A stretch of 61,618 nt of DNA, counting the filler, from Sluysia triapertura (taxonomy: Eukaryota): assembly GCA_046118255.1 (NCBI GenBank). It is 4 parts of 4 records of this genome, joined end to end, with 100 filler letters (N's around TTAATTAATTAA, not from the genome) between each part and the next. Parts side by side here need not be neighbours in the genome. Positions count along the whole stretch, not along the records: positions 49,846 to 61,618 come from JBJNIA010171924.1; 3 more parts are not named here. One strand, written 5' to 3'. The notes below the pieces were generated by a model, which worked only from the letters and a program-made list of their open reading frames with translations, was not told the DNA's origin and made no database searches. The position numbers and the translations under genes were made by a program. Within the stretch, counting starts at the first letter, position 1. Each line of letters begins with the position of its first letter. This document shows positions 51,026 through 59,100 of the stretch, one piece after another.

Positions 51026-53583
51026 ATGAACTCAATTCTATCAGTACTTCCTACGCGTCCAAAAAAAGGTGTTGCATATGTAATTTTCCATTGTTTCACT
51101 TTACCTTCGCAATCGAAGTAAGGATTAGTCCAATAGCCATCTTCGTACTTTGGAACACTGTAATACAATGGATAATGGAAATAACGCTCCAATTGGCGAC
51201 CTTCGATACCGGTACGAATCCAAGGTTTTGCTCGGTATCTCTCTAAACCAAATGTATTGGTGCCCCAGCGTTCCTAAAAGTTTTAAAATTCATAATAAAC
51301 ATTAATCACAATCATACAAGCACAGAAATTGGTTGGTGCATAAATTTGTGCGGTTTTATTTGTTGCAAAGGAAACACACTAACTTCTTGGTTTAACTAAT
51401 TTCAGTTATACTCATTTAAATCATTTAGACTAACTTTCACTTTCATTACCCTCATTAAAATGGAGTGTCAGATAGATAAAAATGAAGATTTCCAGCATCT
51501 ATTCCTTTTCTATTTTAATCAAATTTTCATCGTTTCCGCCCCGTGTCAAACCATCTTTCTGGTCAAATATTTAAAAACGAAGAAGCAATAACAACCTGGA
51601 CCAAAAATCATCAAGTTTCTTCAAACGTGGGATTGACGGTGAATATCTCACCGATTGAGAGACTGAGATTTAATAAATTAATTTTTGTTATCTGGAATTT
51701 TTTGCATGGTTTTTATTCTTGATCAGTATGTATTTTTCACAATTGTAAAAAACCGCACGATCTTATGCACTAACTCATTATTATAAGAATGTATAAGTTT
51801 AATATGATGATAATCGAAAAATCACTTTAAAATATGATTAAAGTAAAAAAAAACTAGTAATGACCTTGAGTACTCGAAACCACTTTTTCTCTGTATAAGG
51901 TGCATACTTATCAATTCCCAAATCGTATATATTGAAAGCTTGATTAACTTCACCTTTGTGAGCGTACGCACCGAACAAATTCGGTCTACTGCCGCTTTCG
52001 TCTTGAAATTTCTGGTAATCATAAAAGACACCACTGGATAAAATGTGCGGATCAGAAGCTGTATTGGCAATTACTTCTCCGAATATGTGATCTTTAATGA
52101 GCGGTTGGCCAAGCTAAACAAAACAAGACATATTTAAGTATTTAGGGTTTTGTAATGGGTTTAAACACCTGACTTAAGAAATCGGATATTGGCAGCTAGA
52201 AGATTACAAAATTGCAAATAGTTGCACGCTATGATTTCGAGATCTTCGACGTACTATAAAAATGTAAATGTTCGTTTGTTCAGAATCTTAAATCTCTGAA
52301 AGTTCTTCACGGATTGCTTTGAATACGCATGAGTTTGTGCTTACAAATCGTGAACAAGGTTCTCAATCACCGAATAGATCTGCTTCGTTCGATGTAGTGT
52401 GCGCGATCAAATAATGGACAAATCTTCTTAGATATACCAGATCGATTCGATTCAAAATTACATAATCTGAACTCTTGAGTCATCTGGAATAGCTGCGACA
52501 CTGCTCATTCATTGAACCGCATTGACTATTCAATTCATTGAAATTCTCGCACATATTTACAAAGCATCCAGAATAAGAAAAGTATTACAAAAATGCACAA
52601 TGATGTAAAAAATTGCCGGAGGCTTCTGAACGATCATTACAAGATATGCGTGGAAACATCAGACCATCAAACAATATTGCACTGCCTGAAATACTCAAAT
52701 TTGTGGTGACGTTAAAATTAATTATAAACATGCATGTTCAGCTACAAAACGATCAATCAGATGAAATACTGCCGGAAATTAGGAACTGGAAGGTGCTACT
52801 TGATCTGATTTTAGGACGAATTTCACTGATTCGTAATTTCTGTAATGTAGTGACGTCAAAATAAGAAATGGCTGTGTGGACGAACTATTCTTGCGACCAA
52901 GAACAAAGACGTCTAACATTCAAAGCATGACAATCACATACAAGTCCATCGACACTGACACGAAAGCAAAATTATCCAACAGAATTTTTTAATTCACTCG
53001 CTCTGTCAGGAATAGCACCTGACCGACCAGCCAATGAGCAACGTCGCAGAAGCAACAATATTGACAAGACCTTTCAAAGGTGAATATGTCCTTATTCCTC
53101 GCTTGATTCAAATGGCGACGCAACAAAGCTCAGGGCTAATTGTGCGGTTTAAGTATGGACATTCTCTCCATCTTCACAAACAGTGGAACAATAGAAATAT
53201 TGCATACGCACAAGTATTGCAAAATTAAACATATTAGAAAATTGAGTTTCTCTTATTTCTCTTTTCCATTTAACCAGACTGAGTGTAGCTGGTCTTGTAA
53301 TATAAAGAATCTCATCCATAAATCAATAATTAACCAATTCGACCTTGGATTATTATCAAGAAACAAAATCACTAACTCTTAAGTTGCCATATTCTTCATT
53401 TTTTACATGATTTTGATAATATGAACTCAAAAAATGAGCCAATCGTAATGCTATTCGACCTTGAACTTCGAAAACCTTTTCCGAACCATAACCAACTTCT
53501 CCTGGTAACTCTAATTTATCTTTTGTGAAAGATTTGCATGATAAATGAGACACACTTTTGTACAGTTGCAGTAACTCCATCAC
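51026..53583 (-). CDS. GPR158/GPR179-like (class C orphan) receptor, extracellular Cache-domain exons; partial
   Basis: Exons 53583-53377, 52113-51865 (absent from the ORF track) and 51273-51026 splice in frame. They give LPGEVGYGSEKVFEVQGRIALRLAHFLS...FGEVIAN..SD..ILSSGVFYD...LFGAYAHK...KWFRVLKERWGTNTFGL...DGYWTNPYFDCEG..KQWKITYATPFFG. Confidence 0.85.
51328..51779 (+). mobile_element. mariner-derived non-autonomous element in intron
   Basis: Imperfect TIRs TTGGTTGGTGCATAAATTTGTGCGGTTTT / AAAACCGCACGATCTTATGCACTAACTCA; C-terminal remnant FFKRGI. Confidence 0.75.
52150..53300 (+). mobile_element. Helitron (PIF1 helicase) relic in intron
   Basis: Fragments ILATKNKDV, PTEFFNSL, EATILTRPFKGEYVLIPR, NKAQG and RNIAYAQVL. 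A short 3' hairpin (ccag..ctgg) is followed by a CTTGT terminus. Confidence 0.8.
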
Positions 53584-54544
53584 CTAAATAAATGTGCGAT
53601 ATAAATACTCATAAAATATACTCATAAATTTATGTTGAATTAAATTCATAGTATAAAATAATTATTATAGAATAACTTTAGAAATTACTAATATTACTCT
53701 TTTATGGCATAGTAAAATTGGAATTACTGAAATAAATATTAATAGAATTTATTAATACTGGAATGAGTATTATGGAATTAACCTACGCCTAAATTGTATG
53801 AAGTTATTCGTTTGCCATTTCTGTTTTGAGTGTTATTGTTTATCTAAGAAAAATACACATAAATAGCCAAACACAACGGGACTACAACAGAACTCGATAT
53901 CCATTATTCTTATTTGAACAAAAAACAAATCATGAATCATACAAATAAATGAAAGTATAAAAGTACTAAAACAAGGGGACACAATTTTCTGTAAATTTGC
54001 AAACGCTGGTTATTCACTGCTGGCGATTACTTAGATTATATTTCTATGTCTCAGAGATAACGGGATCATGCTTATCTGGAACATCTCTCTCATCAGTAAT
54101 TAGTTGGGGGAAATAACCATAACAAATTAAGAAATAAAGTAGAATTTTTGTAAAAACAATTTATTTGTAGCCCTTCTTTTCAAGTTTTTACACTTGTATA
54201 TATTTATGTTGTGGCCTTAAAATGTTTGCAAGTTCTCCACAAGTTGTACTTTATTATTGAAAATAGTATACAAGTACCAACAAGTTATACTATGTATTGC
54301 CACACACACCATTATTATCAGGTTTATATTGTTCGGTTTCTTGAATTTAATTGTGAAGACAAACAACGTAGAAACAGAATTCAACAATAAATTCATTGAA
54401 TAAATTGAAAAGAAAAATAAAACTTGTGTCTTAAATAAGTCCAGAAAAGGGTTAAATAATGCCACTTCCATTCTTACATCAGAATAATTTAAGTAACAGA
54501 ATGAAAAGTCAGCATTAAAAGCGAAATCAAATTAGACTACAAAA

Positions 54545-54613
<69 letters not shown>
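54545..54613. repeat. (AAT)n microsatellite
   Basis: Direct inspection. Confidence 0.95.
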
Positions 54614-54726
54614 TTACATAACAAATATAACAAAAAATATTTTAATTAAATTAATTAAATTAATATTAATTAATCTAAATCAATAATGTATATCTAGCAC
54701 AAATAACTAAACTGATACTACAGTAA

Positions 54727-54958
54727 GATGTGATGATGATAATGATAAAGATGATGATGAAGATGAAGATGAGTATGATGATAAAAATGATGATGATGAT
54801 AATGATGAGGATGATGATAAAGATGATGATTATGATTATGAAAATGAAGATGAGGATGATGATAAAAATGATGAAGATGAGGATGATGATAAAAATGATG
54901 AAGATGATGATTGTGAAGTTGATGATTATAAAGATGATGATAATTCAAACAATGATTA
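54727..54958 (+). repeat. Degenerate (GAT)n tract, open as poly-Asp on + strand
   Basis: gat/gaa/aat/aaa triplets over ~230 bp. The His-rich and Met-rich ORFs in the track are other frames of this repeat. Confidence 0.85.
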
Positions 54959-55154
54959 AATTTGTATCTAGAATTCATATTATAACCGATTTCATTGAAA
55001 GACAATAAAGTAATTAATAAATTAAATGGAAATTTAGATTAAAAACAATAAGCAATATGAAACTATTCACTGATTCGACTTGGAAATTCCTATTAATTCG
55101 TATTTGTAAAAACAATGAATCAGTAAATTAAAAATTAATTCATATTTAGTAATA

Positions 55155-55286
55155 NNNNNNNNNNNNNNNNNNNNNNNNNNNNNNNNNNNNNNNNNNNNNN
55201 NNNNNNNNNNNNNNNNNNNNNNNNNNNNNNNNNNNNNNNNNNNNNNNNNNNNNNNNNNNNNNNNNNNNNNNNNNNNNNNNNNNNNN
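55155..55286. other. Sized assembly gap
   Basis: Run of N. Confidence 0.95.
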
Positions 55287-56129
55287 AAATTTAATTAACA
55301 CTAAAAGAAACAGCCTAAAAGTATTTAGTATTGTCAATAGATTCAAAAAAGCTTACAAATCGAAAATTAAGCATCAAACTCTCAATAAAAAAGTGAAATA
55401 AATTGACCATATTATTACTAAAATAATATTTTTATTAAAATAAATAAGACAAAATAAATTATTAATTTCATCAAAGTTAGTGAGATGATACAACCCCATT
55501 CTTAAATAATTTGGAAATAATAAAAATCCCTGGAAAATTATATCCAGAATTAAATATTTATCAGTAAATATTTACAAAATTTAGGAAAATATCGACATAA
55601 ACACAAAAAATACTTAGAAACATCGTTAAACAAGGGAGAAATACGAAATCATTAACATTTAGTTAGTACTCAAAAACATCTTATATTACTCTAACATCTG
55701 TTAAACAACGAATAGTAACAACCACAAATAAATATTCACTAACAAGGCGGATATAAATAAATAAAGTACATAATTAGAGTTATTATACAGAAAGAAGACA
55801 TAACCAGACGATGATATGCACTGCAATTAACTAGTATATACAGAGAATATAACAAAGGAGACACACAAAGTATTGTAGTATTACATTGGATTATAAACAT
55901 CATTAACAAATTTAAATTTAAAATCAGCATCATCATAAATTTCACTTGTTGAATGAAAATATGACTCACAATAAACACAAAACAATAAGAAGAACTAAAA
56001 AGTACGATCTAACTCTTGGTACACGAACTCTATTATCTGGCTTCATTATTTGGAAAAAATCAGATTTCTATTTTGAACTGGGCCGTACATTTGTGATTGT
56101 TTTGTTCATTGTTATAACTTGATAAAAAT

Positions 56130-59100
56130 TTTATAATATTAATATATAGTCATATTGATTTTCCTCGGATATTGAAAAATAAGATTCAAAAGTAATAAGT
56201 TACACAATCTTAGTTAGCACTTCTACCTGTAACAGCAGAGACGAATATTAACTCGGCCTCCAGGATAAATTTATACTAAGTCATTTAGAGATAAAAAGAA
56301 AAGGTAAAATAAAGTAAATCCAAATAATATATTTACAGAATGTCCAAAAGTAACCAAACCGCAAACTTAAATAAAAATTAGATATAAAAAATTAGATATC
56401 TTCTTTTACGTCATTTTCTTCACTAATATTCATTTCCTTCTGCGAATAGTAGTCTTTGGAATAACTTTGGCTACGTGATCTTATTGATTTTGTTCTGACG
56501 TCATTGTTTGATTTTTGTTCAGCCTGTGCGCTTCTGGACACTCATTTTTAAAAATTCAGCGAATGACTGAATTGGCATGTTAACAGACACAATTGTGTTT
56601 ATTGGGACAGTGAGAATCCCCGTCGTATTATTGAAACGGAAGCCAGTCACAGTCTGGTATGAAATCGACAGCACTGGCTTAGTTGGCCCATTCTTCTTTA
56701 AAGGAACTGTTAATAGTGAACGATATCTTGATATGCTAAAGAGAACACCTGAGCACTACACCAAAGATGTTCATCAATGGCGTGATGAAGCATTTTCTAG
56801 ACGCCGAGAACCAATCGAATTACTTACCAAATCCCCGGATTTCTAAAGGATGCAGTTAATTCTAAAATCTAGAACAATCGATCAACTAAAACAAAGTATT
56901 CAGCATGAATGGAACCAAATTTCCATGGAAACTTGCTAGAAAGTATGTCGCAGTGTTGTCAAAGATGTGCTTGTATTGAAGTTCAAGGTGGACATTTTGA
57001 ACATTTGTAAATACTAAATATATCTATTAAATTTGTCGTTTTTGATATCAAATTTTTATTTAAGTTTGCGGTTCGGTTACTTTATTAACTACTCGGTCCA
57101 ACCATAATTTAAACGTATCATCATCAATACCATATATATGTAATTCTACTTCCAGATATACTAAAAAGTTCTTTCAATTTAGAATCATATTCAGATCTTT
57201 TCATTCAATTCAACACTATGGTTAAATTGAAATCCATTATAAACTAAAAATTATATAATTTTCCATAATGTTTGTATTGTTTAAGATTGATAGATATTTC
57301 AGAACTTATCTTTCCTATCATAGCTTTCATGGACTGCTCCATTTTTAAAAAATATTAAACTGAAAGCACCACCTTAAAACCTTTCATTCCTTTATTCTGT
57401 TATCATTCATCGATATGCTCAATCTAAGCTGAACATATCTTGTTGGGATGCAGGCCTATAGTGCCATGTAGTATAATTGAATATAATAAAAATGATAGCT
57501 CAGTGGTGGATCATTGGAACTGCGCAGCGAAGGTCCTGGGTTCGATCCTCGGTCAGTCCATTTTATGAAGTCTAACATATGGTGAGCCCACATATCGAAT
57601 ACCCTTCTGATGTTGGAGTTAATGATTTATAAGATGTTTGAGGACAAACATAACTGAATTGGGTGATATATGTTTGGATGAAGGCCTAAAGTGCCATGTA
57701 GTATTATTGAATATAATAAAAATGAAATTGATAGCTCAGTGGTAGGGCATTCGAACTGCGTAGCGAAGGTCCCGGGTTCGATTCCCGGTCAGTCCATTTT
57801 ATGAAGTCTAACAAATTATTCTATTACTTCTGCGTATTAAATTTAACTTGGTCATTAGAATTAAATACCGACCAAAAATAAATTATCATCAAATAACTAA
57901 ATTTAAATATGAAAATTAATAAATCATTTATGTGCTGAATAAACAAACCTTATCTAATCGCCAACCTCCGGAGGCACCTATTTTACTGTGAGATACCATG
58001 ATTTTCTTTAGAGAACCCAATGGTTCACTGGTTATCTTAATTAAGTCATTACATTATTATTAACAATTTATTACAGCGTTTTTCATATAATTTAATCCTC
58101 TTGTCAAATGATTTTCATCTGTATTCCTTACACGAAGAATCAGTGATATTCTTTTAAAATTATAATTAAATGATCCCCAATTGTTCTATTTCATTTGCCA
58201 TTCTTACATTTGGCGTATTGTTTTGGTTATGGATTCAATAAATTTATCAATTGTTGTAATATAATGCTTTAAATTATTTGACAAAATGATTAAATTATAT
58301 GAAAAACCTTGTAATTTATATAGTATTAATATCATATTATAAAGTAATTACTCAAAAGCGCTTAGAATGCGTCATTCATTTAAAATATATCTGAAATAGA
58401 AATAACATTGTCTTCTTAAATATTTCACAATCTTCCAGTAATGTGACATTATCTGGTAGCTAGTTATACATTTTTGAAACATGAATGAAATATAACTTGT
58501 TACTGTGGATTCTGTATAAATTATTATTATAACTTAAAGATATATTCATTTTGGTTTCCGAATTTTTATTATATCAAGAAATATTCAGAACTTCCGAAAA
58601 GTAAGCATACTTCTTAATTATTACTCGGAAAATCAATCTTGCATATTGATTCAATATGTCGCAATTTTTTTGTACGGAACTAAGTAAAATATACCTTTAT
58701 TAAAATCTATTGTCACAACGTTATTAATAAATTTTCTAATATTTGACATCCTTTTTAACAATACATTCAATATTTTCTTCTATGTTCATTTATGAATCTA
58801 TATATTTTGTACTTTTTACAATCTATAATTAATTCATTTATTGTGGCTTATTTTTTCTTCATTGATTTTCAAATTTTATTCTCAAACCATTTTATACATT
58901 GAGTTATTAATTTTTAGAGCGAAATAATTCAATTTGAATAAATGAAAAAGAAACACAATTGTAATGAATGTGTGTGTCAATGAAATTTATGTGAATAATG
59001 GTAATGGACTATGGATGTGTCCTACCGAAATGTGATGTGGTAACGCAATCAATAAATTTCCTCATTTTCATTTTTAGTGGAAAAAACAAAATTATCCATA

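What the first reader, a model, noticed from the sequence alone, without database searches (positions are those of the whole stretch)
57441..57813. Miniature LTR retroelement whose LTRs carry a tRNA-derived Pol III gene
Seen: two ~140-bp direct repeats starting TG and ending CA. They flank a 93-bp non-coding interior that starts with a TGG-led primer-binding site and ends in a purine-rich tract. A second two-LTR copy lies at 50586-50850. Five more LTRs lie at 1950, 6202, 6458, 45925 and 48066. The LTR consensus contains a tRNA-Cys-like sequence with A box TAGCTCAGTGG, B box GGTTCGATYCC and a TTTT terminator. Both LTRs of this copy share one deletion (loss of GTTAGACGGGGC), as expected when LTRs are regenerated by reverse transcription. 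Established: this is TRIM architecture, and plant Cassandra TRIMs carry a 5S-derived Pol III promoter in their LTRs. From memory, tRNA-LTR elements with 4-bp TSDs have been named Helenus, so the class may be known while this family is probably unannotated. Inference: a Pol III-driven parasite of an LTR retrotransposon, abundant here (7 loci in 62 kb), that scanners would mislabel as a SINE or pseudo-tRNA.
Basis: partly seen in the sequence, partly recalled or inferred. Interest (0 to 1): 0.9.

Follow-up and report, generated by a model that had tools for sequence, protein, structure and literature searches.

The report
Tiny tRNA-bearing LTR retroelement (Helenus type)
This is a 373-base non-coding jumping gene built like a miniature retrovirus whose two end-repeats each carry a decayed tRNA gene; the type (Helenus) was published in 2024, so this is a new and very abundant family of a known kind.

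Summary
Two direct repeats (57441-57577 and 57671-57813, 91% identical, TG...CA ends) flank a 93-nt non-coding interior. The interior starts, after two bases, with TGGTGAGCCCAC and ends in a purine-rich GGGTGATATA. Each repeat carries a tRNA-like module with canonical A and B boxes and a TTTT just after it. A second, damaged copy in the same order lies inverted at 50850-50586, with unrelated flanks.

Contigs of the one public run that holds this locus show a very abundant dispersed family. 11,336 contigs lay on the element. Depth jumps from about 15 to 10^5-10^6 exactly between 57441 and 57813. About 500 contigs leave the element at base 57813/57814 into unlike AT-rich flanks.

This architecture matches Helenus (Kojima 2024, PMC10886601), the tRNA-bearing TRIM class. 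None of the five element-specific motifs I looked up occurs in that paper's sequence file, so this is probably a new family, likely in an arthropod.

Not confirmed:
- a 4-bp target-site duplication (ATCT versus AATT in copy A);
- Pol III transcription (motifs only);
- the "tRNA-Cys" label (the acceptor stem looks tRNA-Ala-like).

Verdict: new member of a known kind, of modest interest.

The parts
57441..57577 (+). 5' LTR of copy A (137 nt, TG...CA)
   Evidence: Direct repeat with 57671-57813, 91.2% identity. The upstream flank is unrelated to the element. Depth rises from about 15 to more than 10^5 here.
57496..57564 (+). tRNA-like module of the 5' LTR: box A 57496-57506, box B 57539-57548, TTTT 57561-57564. 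The 5' acceptor strand is lost by deletion.
   Evidence: Read directly. T runs. It falls below the Rfam and ARAGORN thresholds.
57580..57591 (+). Primer-binding-site-like TGGTGAGCCCAC, 2 nt after the LTR's CA
   Evidence: Identical in copy B at 50756-50745. 11 of 12 bases match the complement of the Apis mellifera tRNA-Trp-CCA 3' end as printed in Fig. S2 of PMC10886601.
57578..57670 (+). Non-coding interior (93 nt)
   Evidence: 85% identical to copy B's interior. It is itself highly repeated, with summed depth of 4-8 x 10^5. Five other contigs bridge LTR end, interior and LTR start in the same order (table 8, records 2-6).
57661..57670 (+). Purine-rich tract GGGTGATATA (weak polypurine tract) abutting the 3' LTR
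   Evidence: Copy B has GGGTGAGATA at the same place.
57671..57813 (+). 3' LTR of copy A (143 nt, TG...CA)
   Evidence: 301 and 204 contigs leave the element at 57813 and 57814 into flanks that agree only 0.42-0.45 (table 7).
57725..57800 (+). tRNA-like module of the 3' LTR: box A 57732-57742, box B 57775-57785, TTTT 57797-57800
   Evidence: Rfam tRNA 36.8 bits, E 8e-5. ARAGORN tRNA-???. It does not fold better than shuffles, z 0.22.
50586..50850 (-). Copy B, same order but defective. 5' LTR 50850-50760: box A region deleted, and it ends in CA right at the tRNA-like 3' end. PBS-like site 50756-50745. 3' LTR 50663 to about 50586, broken off within box A.
   Evidence: Flanks unrelated to the element.

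Best explanation

Shown here:
- Two LTRs with TG...CA ends and a short inverted terminal repeat.
- A TGG-led site 2 nt after the 5' LTR and a purine tract before the 3' LTR.
- No coding capacity.
- A second collinear copy.
- A dispersed family of very high copy number with base-exact outer limits.

Inferred mechanism:
- An RNA starts near the 5' end of the tRNA-like module in the 5' LTR. It is driven by the internal A and B boxes, perhaps helped by the TATA-like ATATAATAAAA about 26 nt upstream.
- It reads through the LTR's own weak T4 stop, crosses the interior, and ends at the T4 of the 3' LTR.
- On this reading the tRNA-like module is R, the 13 nt after TTTT are U5, and the first 55-70 nt are U3.
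- A host tRNA with a 3' end like tRNA-Trp primes minus-strand synthesis at TGGTGAGCCCAC. The purine tract primes the plus strand.
- Gag, reverse transcriptase and integrase come in trans from an autonomous element, most likely Gypsy/Ty3-like as proposed for animal Helenus.

Copy A is an old insertion. Its LTRs share two derived states inherited from the parent (the 13-nt loss, and A where most copies have T at 57531 and 57767). Each has since gained private changes.
For: - Repeat structure and identity.
- tRNA module.
- Second collinear copy with different flanks.
- Family census from the single run: 11,336 contigs laid, sharp rise at 57441 and fall after 57813, 505 contigs with loose ends at 57813/57814 into non-consensus AT-rich sequence with no A-tail. 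Records 2-6 bridge LTR end, interior and LTR start in other copies.
- Shared and private differences of the two LTRs: tables 3 and 7.
- Published definition and layout of Helenus: LTRs written TG..., upstream part, tRNA-like, TTTT, short tail...CA, with TGG-led interiors.
- The only T4 runs on the sense strand of copy A are the two right after the tRNA-like modules.
Against: - No target-site duplication at copy A: ATCT versus AATT, 2 of 4. The best alternative needs shifted limits. Copy B cannot be tested.
- The purine tract is weak beside the G-rich tracts of published Helenus.
- The PBS matches the printed honeybee tRNA-Trp end at only 11 of 12, and no host tRNA was available.
- Lack of T4 runs inside the element is not significant against its own composition (P 0.48).
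- No RNA data: no RNA run holds the locus.
- Summed depth is lower over the first 25 nt of the LTR than over the interior. I put this down to copy A's five private changes there, but that is an inference.
- With two LTRs and one interior, a 1.6-unit local tandem duplication gives the same picture for this single locus.
Confidence: 0.8

Rival explanations
1. It is a tRNA-derived SINE moved by a LINE. The unit would be tRNA head, body (the 'interior') and tail (the 'LTR 5' part', which ends A-rich: AATATAATAAAAATGA). Copy A would then be about 1.6 units laid head to tail.
For: The tRNA-like head has A and B boxes. The stretch just before each tRNA-like module is A-rich. The tRNA 3' half is the most abundant piece, followed by the interior (table 2). 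No TSD of LTR type is seen at copy A.
Against: Both copies begin at the same base (TGTTGGG), about 55-70 nt upstream of the tRNA-like module, not at its start. About 500 contigs end at the CA 13 nt after the TTTT, not at an A-rich tail. A Pol III transcript from the head would meet TTTT before the supposed body. TGG sits 2 nt after the CA, and TG...CA forms an inverted terminal repeat. No variable-length duplication flanks copy A.
Confidence: 0.08
2. It is an ordinary Pol II-transcribed TRIM that merely captured a tRNA or SINE fragment in its LTR. The tRNA-like part would be a passenger or a structural or processing signal. The TATA-like and AATAAA-like sequence in U3 would serve as the real promoter and poly(A) signal.
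For: ATATAATAAAA lies about 26 nt before the tRNA-like start in copies that keep the 13 nt. A TTTT right after the module would stop Pol III in the 5' LTR. Copy B's 5' LTR has lost box A, and several contigs show the same kind of loss (tables 5 and 5c), so box A is not needed for a copy to persist. The Helenus paper itself says the Pol III promoter is unproven.
Against: Boxes A and B are canonical in both LTRs of a copy about 9% diverged. The tRNA 3' half with box B is the best-kept and most abundant part of the family. The AATAAA-like and TATA-like sequences overlap, which would leave an R of almost no length.
Confidence: 0.1
3. It is a local tandem duplication or a short satellite-like array (period about 230-236 nt) of a tRNA-containing repeat, not an insertion made by reverse transcription.
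For: A single LTR-interior-LTR unit equals 1.6 tandem units. One contig joins an LTR end directly to an LTR start (joint 57578>57671). Tandem arrays are reported for the Helenus family LTR-11_DR. Copy A has no TSD.
Against: Two loci 7 kb apart, in opposite orientation, both start at TG of the same unit and hold just two LTRs. Hundreds of different flanks follow the CA end. Tandem Repeats Finder reports nothing here.
Confidence: 0.02

Closest known systems
Helenus (TRIM with tRNA-like LTRs; Kojima 2024, Biology 13:119, PMC10886601)
   Same: LTRs of 100-320 nt written TG..., upstream part, tRNA-like with A and B boxes, TTTT, short tail...CA. Short non-coding interior that starts with a TGG-led PBS 0-3 nt after the LTR and ends in a purine tract. 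Total length is within the published range of 311-1263 bp. The tRNA-like part is not a working tRNA. Some published families use a tRNA-Trp-type PBS (Helenus-2_SyJa).
   Different: None of five element-specific motifs (PBS, LTR ends, U3) occurs in the paper's sequence file. The published hymenopteran families are GC-rich, 537-1263 bp, with TGTAAC/TGTCAC...GTTACA ends. This one is AT-rich, 373 bp, with TGTTGG...CTAACA ends. Its purine tract is much weaker. The 4-bp TSD is not seen at copy A. Abundance looks far above the largest published family (5,575 LTRs), but my figure is only a rough one.
Cassandra (plant TRIM with 5S rRNA in its LTRs) and Ajax (nemertean, 5S promoter part)
   Same: Same idea: a small-RNA gene with an internal Pol III promoter and terminator inside each LTR of a TRIM. 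Grouped with Helenus as TRIMp3.
   Different: The module is 5S-derived rather than tRNA-derived. They make 5-bp TSDs. Pol III transcripts have been shown only for Cassandra, per the statement in PMC10886601.
PbTRIM (ant TRIM; Zhou and Cahan 2012, PMC3532108)
   Same: An insect TRIM with 4-bp TSDs, often ATAT, inserting in AT-rich DNA, with abundant solo LTRs. Here the flanks are also AT-rich, and ATAT or GATA stands just before the TG of both copies.
   Different: PbTRIM is 480-781 bp with a tRNA-Leu PBS, and the passages I read mention no tRNA-like module in its LTR.
tRNA-derived SINEs (SINE2)
   Same: tRNA-derived module with A and B boxes, short, non-coding, very abundant, and mis-called as tRNA by tRNA finders.
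   Different: SINEs start at the tRNA head, end in a tail shared with or recognised by a LINE, and have variable TSDs. Here the module is internal to a terminal direct repeat with TG...CA ends.

Membership tests
Helenus / TRIMp3 | Two LTRs in direct orientation around a short non-coding interior, with the whole element in the TRIM size range | tested here: met
   LTRs of 137 and 143 nt, 91.2% identical, a 93-nt interior, 373 nt in all. ORFs are 45 aa or shorter. Copy B is collinear.
Helenus / TRIMp3 | LTR holds a tRNA-like sequence with conserved box A (TRGCY...YGG) and box B (GGTTC) | tested here: met
   TAGCTCAGTGG and GGTTCGATYC in both LTRs. Rfam tRNA 36.8 bits. ARAGORN.
Helenus / TRIMp3 | LTR termini TG...CA | tested here: met
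   Both LTRs of copy A and the 5' LTR of copy B. The 3' limit is fixed to the base by 505 contigs.
Helenus / TRIMp3 | PBS just after the 5' LTR, complementary to a host tRNA | tested here: inconclusive
   TGGTGAGCCCAC lies 2 nt after the CA and is identical in copies A and B. It matches 11 of 12 against the honeybee tRNA-Trp 3' end printed in the paper's Fig. S2. No tRNA of the host genome was available.
Helenus / TRIMp3 | Polypurine tract just before the 3' LTR | tested here: inconclusive
   GGGTGATATA (A) and GGGTGAGATA (B), 7-8 purines of 10. This is much weaker than the G-runs of published families.
Helenus / TRIMp3 | 4-bp target-site duplication (animal families) | tested here: inconclusive
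   Copy A has ATCT versus AATT, not a duplication. Copy B's 3' end is missing. One copy about 9% diverged cannot settle a family trait, and no further copies with flanks could be fetched.
Helenus / TRIMp3 | Dispersed multi-copy family including the interior | tested here: met
   11,336 contigs of run X1 lie on the element. The interior is as repeated as the LTRs, and the flanks after the CA end are heterogeneous.
A published Helenus family (sequence identity) | Shares family-specific sequence with a consensus in DataS1 of PMC10886601 | tested here: not met
   TGGTGAGCCCA, GTCAGTCCATT and AGGCCTAAAGTG were each found 0 times. Only generic tRNA-box words, and TGTTGGGAT in two fungal families, occur. 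The look-up was by exact words, not by alignment.
tRNA-derived SINE (SINE2) | The element starts at the tRNA head and ends in an A-rich, simple-repeat or LINE-like tail with variable TSDs | tested here: not met
   Both copies start 55-70 nt upstream of the module at the same TG. The family ends at CA with no tail. No variable-length duplication is seen.
Functional tRNA gene | Cloverleaf with a 7-nt anticodon loop and an intact acceptor stem | tested here: not met
   The anticodon loop is 10 nt in the Rfam alignment. ARAGORN gives no isotype. In copy A the 5' acceptor strand is deleted, and the fold is no better than shuffles.

The most novel reading that the evidence does not exclude
The tRNA-like module may be the working R region of a truly Pol III-made retroelement RNA, in what may be the most abundant Helenus family yet seen (rough order 10^4-10^5 copies, against 5,575 LTRs for the largest published family).

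In a sub-lineage like copy B, the 17 nt after the module are lost between two CATT words. The LTR then ends in CA exactly at the tRNA-like 3' end, and the PBS follows 2-3 nt later. At least two further contigs show this junction. If such copies really transpose, the tRNA-like module alone would serve as R plus U5 and would supply the integrase end.

Full members also keep a perfect acceptor/T-arm minihelix with G3.U70 and A73, the alanine identity set. This leaves open that the small RNA is recognised by tRNA enzymes (RNase P/Z, CCA-adding enzyme, AlaRS).
Probability: 0.2. Interest if true: 0.6.

Novelty: new member of a known kind. Interest (0 to 1): 0.35.

Why it matters
Helenus/TRIMp3 elements were described only in 2024 and from few lineages. 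A further family that is compact, AT-rich and extremely abundant would widen the known range. It would also be a convenient subject for the open question of whether these LTR elements are really transcribed by Pol III. For annotation, each copy can be called as one or two tRNA pseudogenes or as a SINE, which would inflate tRNA counts and misassign tens of thousands of repeats in this genome.

Tried and rejected
- Further copies from public collections. Two exact-pattern scans of metagenome contigs found nothing. The scan of bacterial and archaeal genomes found only a genuine archaeal tRNA-Ala that shares the T arm and acceptor strand. It is not a copy of the element, but it pointed me to the Ala-like acceptor stem.
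- Copies through proteins. An ORF across the element has no relatives in the protein collection. The neighbouring mariner ORF gave one relative on an 8.9-kb contig that lacks the element.
- Only one sequencing run holds the locus, and it is not RNA, so expression, RNA ends and strand could not be examined.
- Tandem Repeats Finder reports no array.
- An apparent resemblance of copy A's upstream flank (AACATAT) to the LTR end proved no better than shuffled flanks.
- T4 avoidance as a Pol III signature is not significant against the element's own composition.
- A thermodynamic fold of the tRNA-like modules of copy A is no better than shuffles.
- The 'tRNA-Cys' label is rejected in favour of an Ala-like acceptor stem with an unassignable anticodon.
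- The host could be narrowed only to 'probably arthropod', from one exon of a GPR158/179-like gene.

Full report
**What is there.**
Reading 57200-58100 and the repeat search show two direct repeats, 57441-57577 and 57671-57813. A global alignment gives 124 matches in 136 aligned columns (91.2%, K2P 0.094) plus one 6-nt gap. Both repeats begin TG and end CA. Their ends form a short imperfect inverted repeat (TGTTGG...CTAACA), as in LTRs.

Between them lie 93 nt with no ORF longer than 45 aa. Two bases after the CA of the first repeat stands TGGTGAGCCCAC. The interior ends GGGTGATATA, directly before the TG of the second repeat.

Each repeat holds TAGCTCAGTGG (box A), GGTTCGATYC (box B) and a TTTT five bases after the T arm's partner strand. 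Rfam scores 57725-57796 as tRNA at 36.8 bits against a gathering score of 29, and ARAGORN calls the same stretch a tRNA of unknown isotype. The module in the 5' repeat is not detected.

**The second copy.**
On the minus strand, 50850 to about 50586 aligns with copy A in the same order: LTR start, tRNA-like 3' half, the identical TGGTGAGCCCACATATCGAATACCCTTCT, an interior about 85% identical, GGGTGAGATA, then LTR start again.

It is damaged. The first LTR lacks the box A half of the module and the last 17 nt. The second LTR breaks off within box A.

The flanks of A and B resemble neither each other nor the element. Local alignments score no better than shuffled flanks. So the 5' limit at TG is base-exact in two independent loci.

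**The family.**
Only one public run holds the locus, and it is not RNA. Laying its contigs on 57250-58000 at 80% likeness put 11,336 contigs on the element.
- Summed depth is about 15 in the unique flanks. It rises to 10^5-10^6 between 57441 and 57813 and falls back to under 110 after 57821.
- 301 contigs leave the element at 57813 and 204 at 57814. They run into sequence that agrees only 0.42-0.45, meaning many different AT-rich flanks and no tail. The split between the two positions is what an A-rich next base would give.
- The interior is about as repeated as the LTRs.
- Five contigs that differ from the window by 12-15% bridge LTR end, interior and LTR start (table 8, records 2-6). The arrangement therefore recurs elsewhere in the genome.

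The tool warns that summed depth is not a copy number. Dividing by the flank depth suggests an order of 10^4-10^5 copies, which I offer only as a rough guide. The density in the piece, two copies in 11.8 kb, points the same way.

**History of copy A.**
Twenty contigs continue after 57495 with AATTGTTAGACGGGGCTGATAGCTCAGTG (table 7), and copy B's second LTR has the same words. Both LTRs of copy A lack about 13 nt there.

Both LTRs also have A where most contigs have T (57531 and 57767). Each LTR carries private departures from the majority letter (table 3). Shared derived states plus private changes are what a pair of LTRs made from one template and then left to decay would show. A local duplication would look the same at a single locus.

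**The tRNA-like module.**
In members that keep the 13 nt, the seven bases before box A (GGGCTGA) pair perfectly with TCAGTCC after the T arm, with G3.U70 and an A at the discriminator position. From established knowledge this is the tRNA-Ala identity set. A genuine archaeal tRNA-Ala found by chance has the same acceptor and T arm.

The anticodon arm is aberrant, with a 10-nt loop in the Rfam alignment. No isotype can be assigned, and 'tRNA-Cys-like' is not supported. In copy A the 5' acceptor strand is gone, and the modules fold no better than shuffles. These are not working tRNA genes, as reported for most Helenus families.

**What it is.**
The layout is that of a terminal-repeat retrotransposon in miniature with a tRNA-like sequence in the LTR. 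This class was named Helenus by Kojima (2024, PMC10886601). It is defined by two LTRs with a tRNA-like part, a PBS and a PPT, with 4-bp TSDs in animals and 5-bp TSDs in fungi and plants. Lengths run from 311 to 1263 bp. Animal families are thought to be moved by Gypsy elements.

LTRs in the paper's sequence file have the same internal order: TG, upstream part, tRNA-like, TTTT, short tail, CA. Three of the family-specific words I looked up (PBS, LTR end, U3) are absent from that file. The hymenopteran families printed there are GC-rich, longer, and end TGTAAC...GTTACA. So this is not one of the published families, within the limits of a word look-up.

The PBS matches 11 of 12 against the complement of the honeybee tRNA-Trp 3' end shown in the paper's Fig. 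S2. The same figure lists a Trp-primed Gypsy and a Trp-primed Helenus.

**How it most likely works (inferred).**
An RNA starts near the 5' end of the module in the 5' LTR, reads through that LTR's own T4, and stops at the T4 of the 3' LTR. That makes the module R, the 13 nt after it U5, and the first 55-70 nt U3. A host tRNA primes at the PBS, the purine tract primes the plus strand, and an autonomous LTR element supplies the proteins.

The two T4 runs are the only ones on the sense strand of copy A. This is not significant against the element's own composition (P 0.48), although only 9.6% of windows of the same size in the piece lack a T4 run. Pol III transcription is untested here, and the Helenus paper says the same of its families.

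A Pol II reading cannot be excluded. On that reading the TATA-like ATATAATAAAA about 26 nt upstream of the module is the promoter.

**What does not fit, or could not be tested.**
- Copy A has no target-site duplication: ATCT before, AATT after. The only exact 4-mer needs limits shifted by 4-5 nt. For a copy about 9% diverged this is not unlikely, but it is still a miss.
- The purine tract is weak.
- Depth over the first 25 nt of the LTR is much lower than over the interior. Copy A has five private changes in 57667-57681, which probably breaks alignments there.
- I could not fetch more copies with flanks, so the TSD and solo-LTR census is still to be done.

**Variants seen.**
Several contigs show LTRs without the box A half, as in copy B (tables 5 and 5c). 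One contig joins an LTR end directly to an LTR start (57578>57671). At least two contigs, like copy B, go from the tRNA-like 3' end to TGGTGAGCC after 2-5 nt, skipping TTTTATGAAGTCTAACA. In copy B this loss lies between two CATT words and leaves an LTR that still ends in CA.

**Host and surroundings.**
The piece has 20-36% G+C. One exon (51010-51192, minus strand) resembles the GPR158/179 extracellular domain, and its nearest cluster is arthropod. The host was not identified further.

**Limits I kept.**
I report only what the copies and the tool tables show.

**Verdict.**
It is a new, very abundant family of a class already published, and of modest interest.

Noticed in passing
window 56347-57083: Internally deleted mariner-like transposon. 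It has 45-nt terminal inverted repeats, 93% complementary (I22), around broken transposase remnants. The ORF 56577-56846 includes ...VGPFFFKGTVNSERYLDML..., and later pieces include ...QLKQSIQHEWNQIS.... Its one relative in the protein collection lies on a contig that also encodes a Transposase_1 protein. The element ends about 360 nt upstream of copy A.
   Followed up: partly
window 51010-51192 (-): Probable exon of a GPR158/179-like receptor (Cache-type extracellular domain). Pfam PF22572 scores 25.3 bits, just under its cutoff. The nearest Atlas cluster is arthropod. Copy B lies about 160 nt from this exon, presumably in an intron.
   Followed up: partly
window 54530-54626 and 54695-54982: A long AAT/ATA microsatellite, followed by a minisatellite with a 9-nt period rich in ATG/ATGATG (D1 and D2). 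Its inverted counterpart, a TTA run, lies at 49947-50016.
   Followed up: no
window about 55150-55340: A run of N (an assembly gap or masked stretch), seen as X in ORF 55146-55346.
   Followed up: no
window 58070-58114 and 58271-58315: A 45-nt inverted repeat, 89% complementary, with arms 156 nt apart (I25). It may be a small MITE-like element.
   Followed up: no
L001 1474-1548 (-): A genuine tRNA-Ala (CGC) of a Methanosarcinales MAG shares 26-29 nt (T arm, acceptor strand, TTTT) exactly with the element's module. This is ordinary tRNA conservation, not transfer, but it points to an alanine-type origin of the module.
   Followed up: yes
window 57441-57813, contigs of run X1: Structural variants of the family in other contigs: LTRs lacking the box A half, an LTR end joined directly to an LTR start (57578>57671), and junctions from the tRNA-like 3' end straight to the PBS, as in copy B (tables 5 and 5c).
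   Followed up: partly
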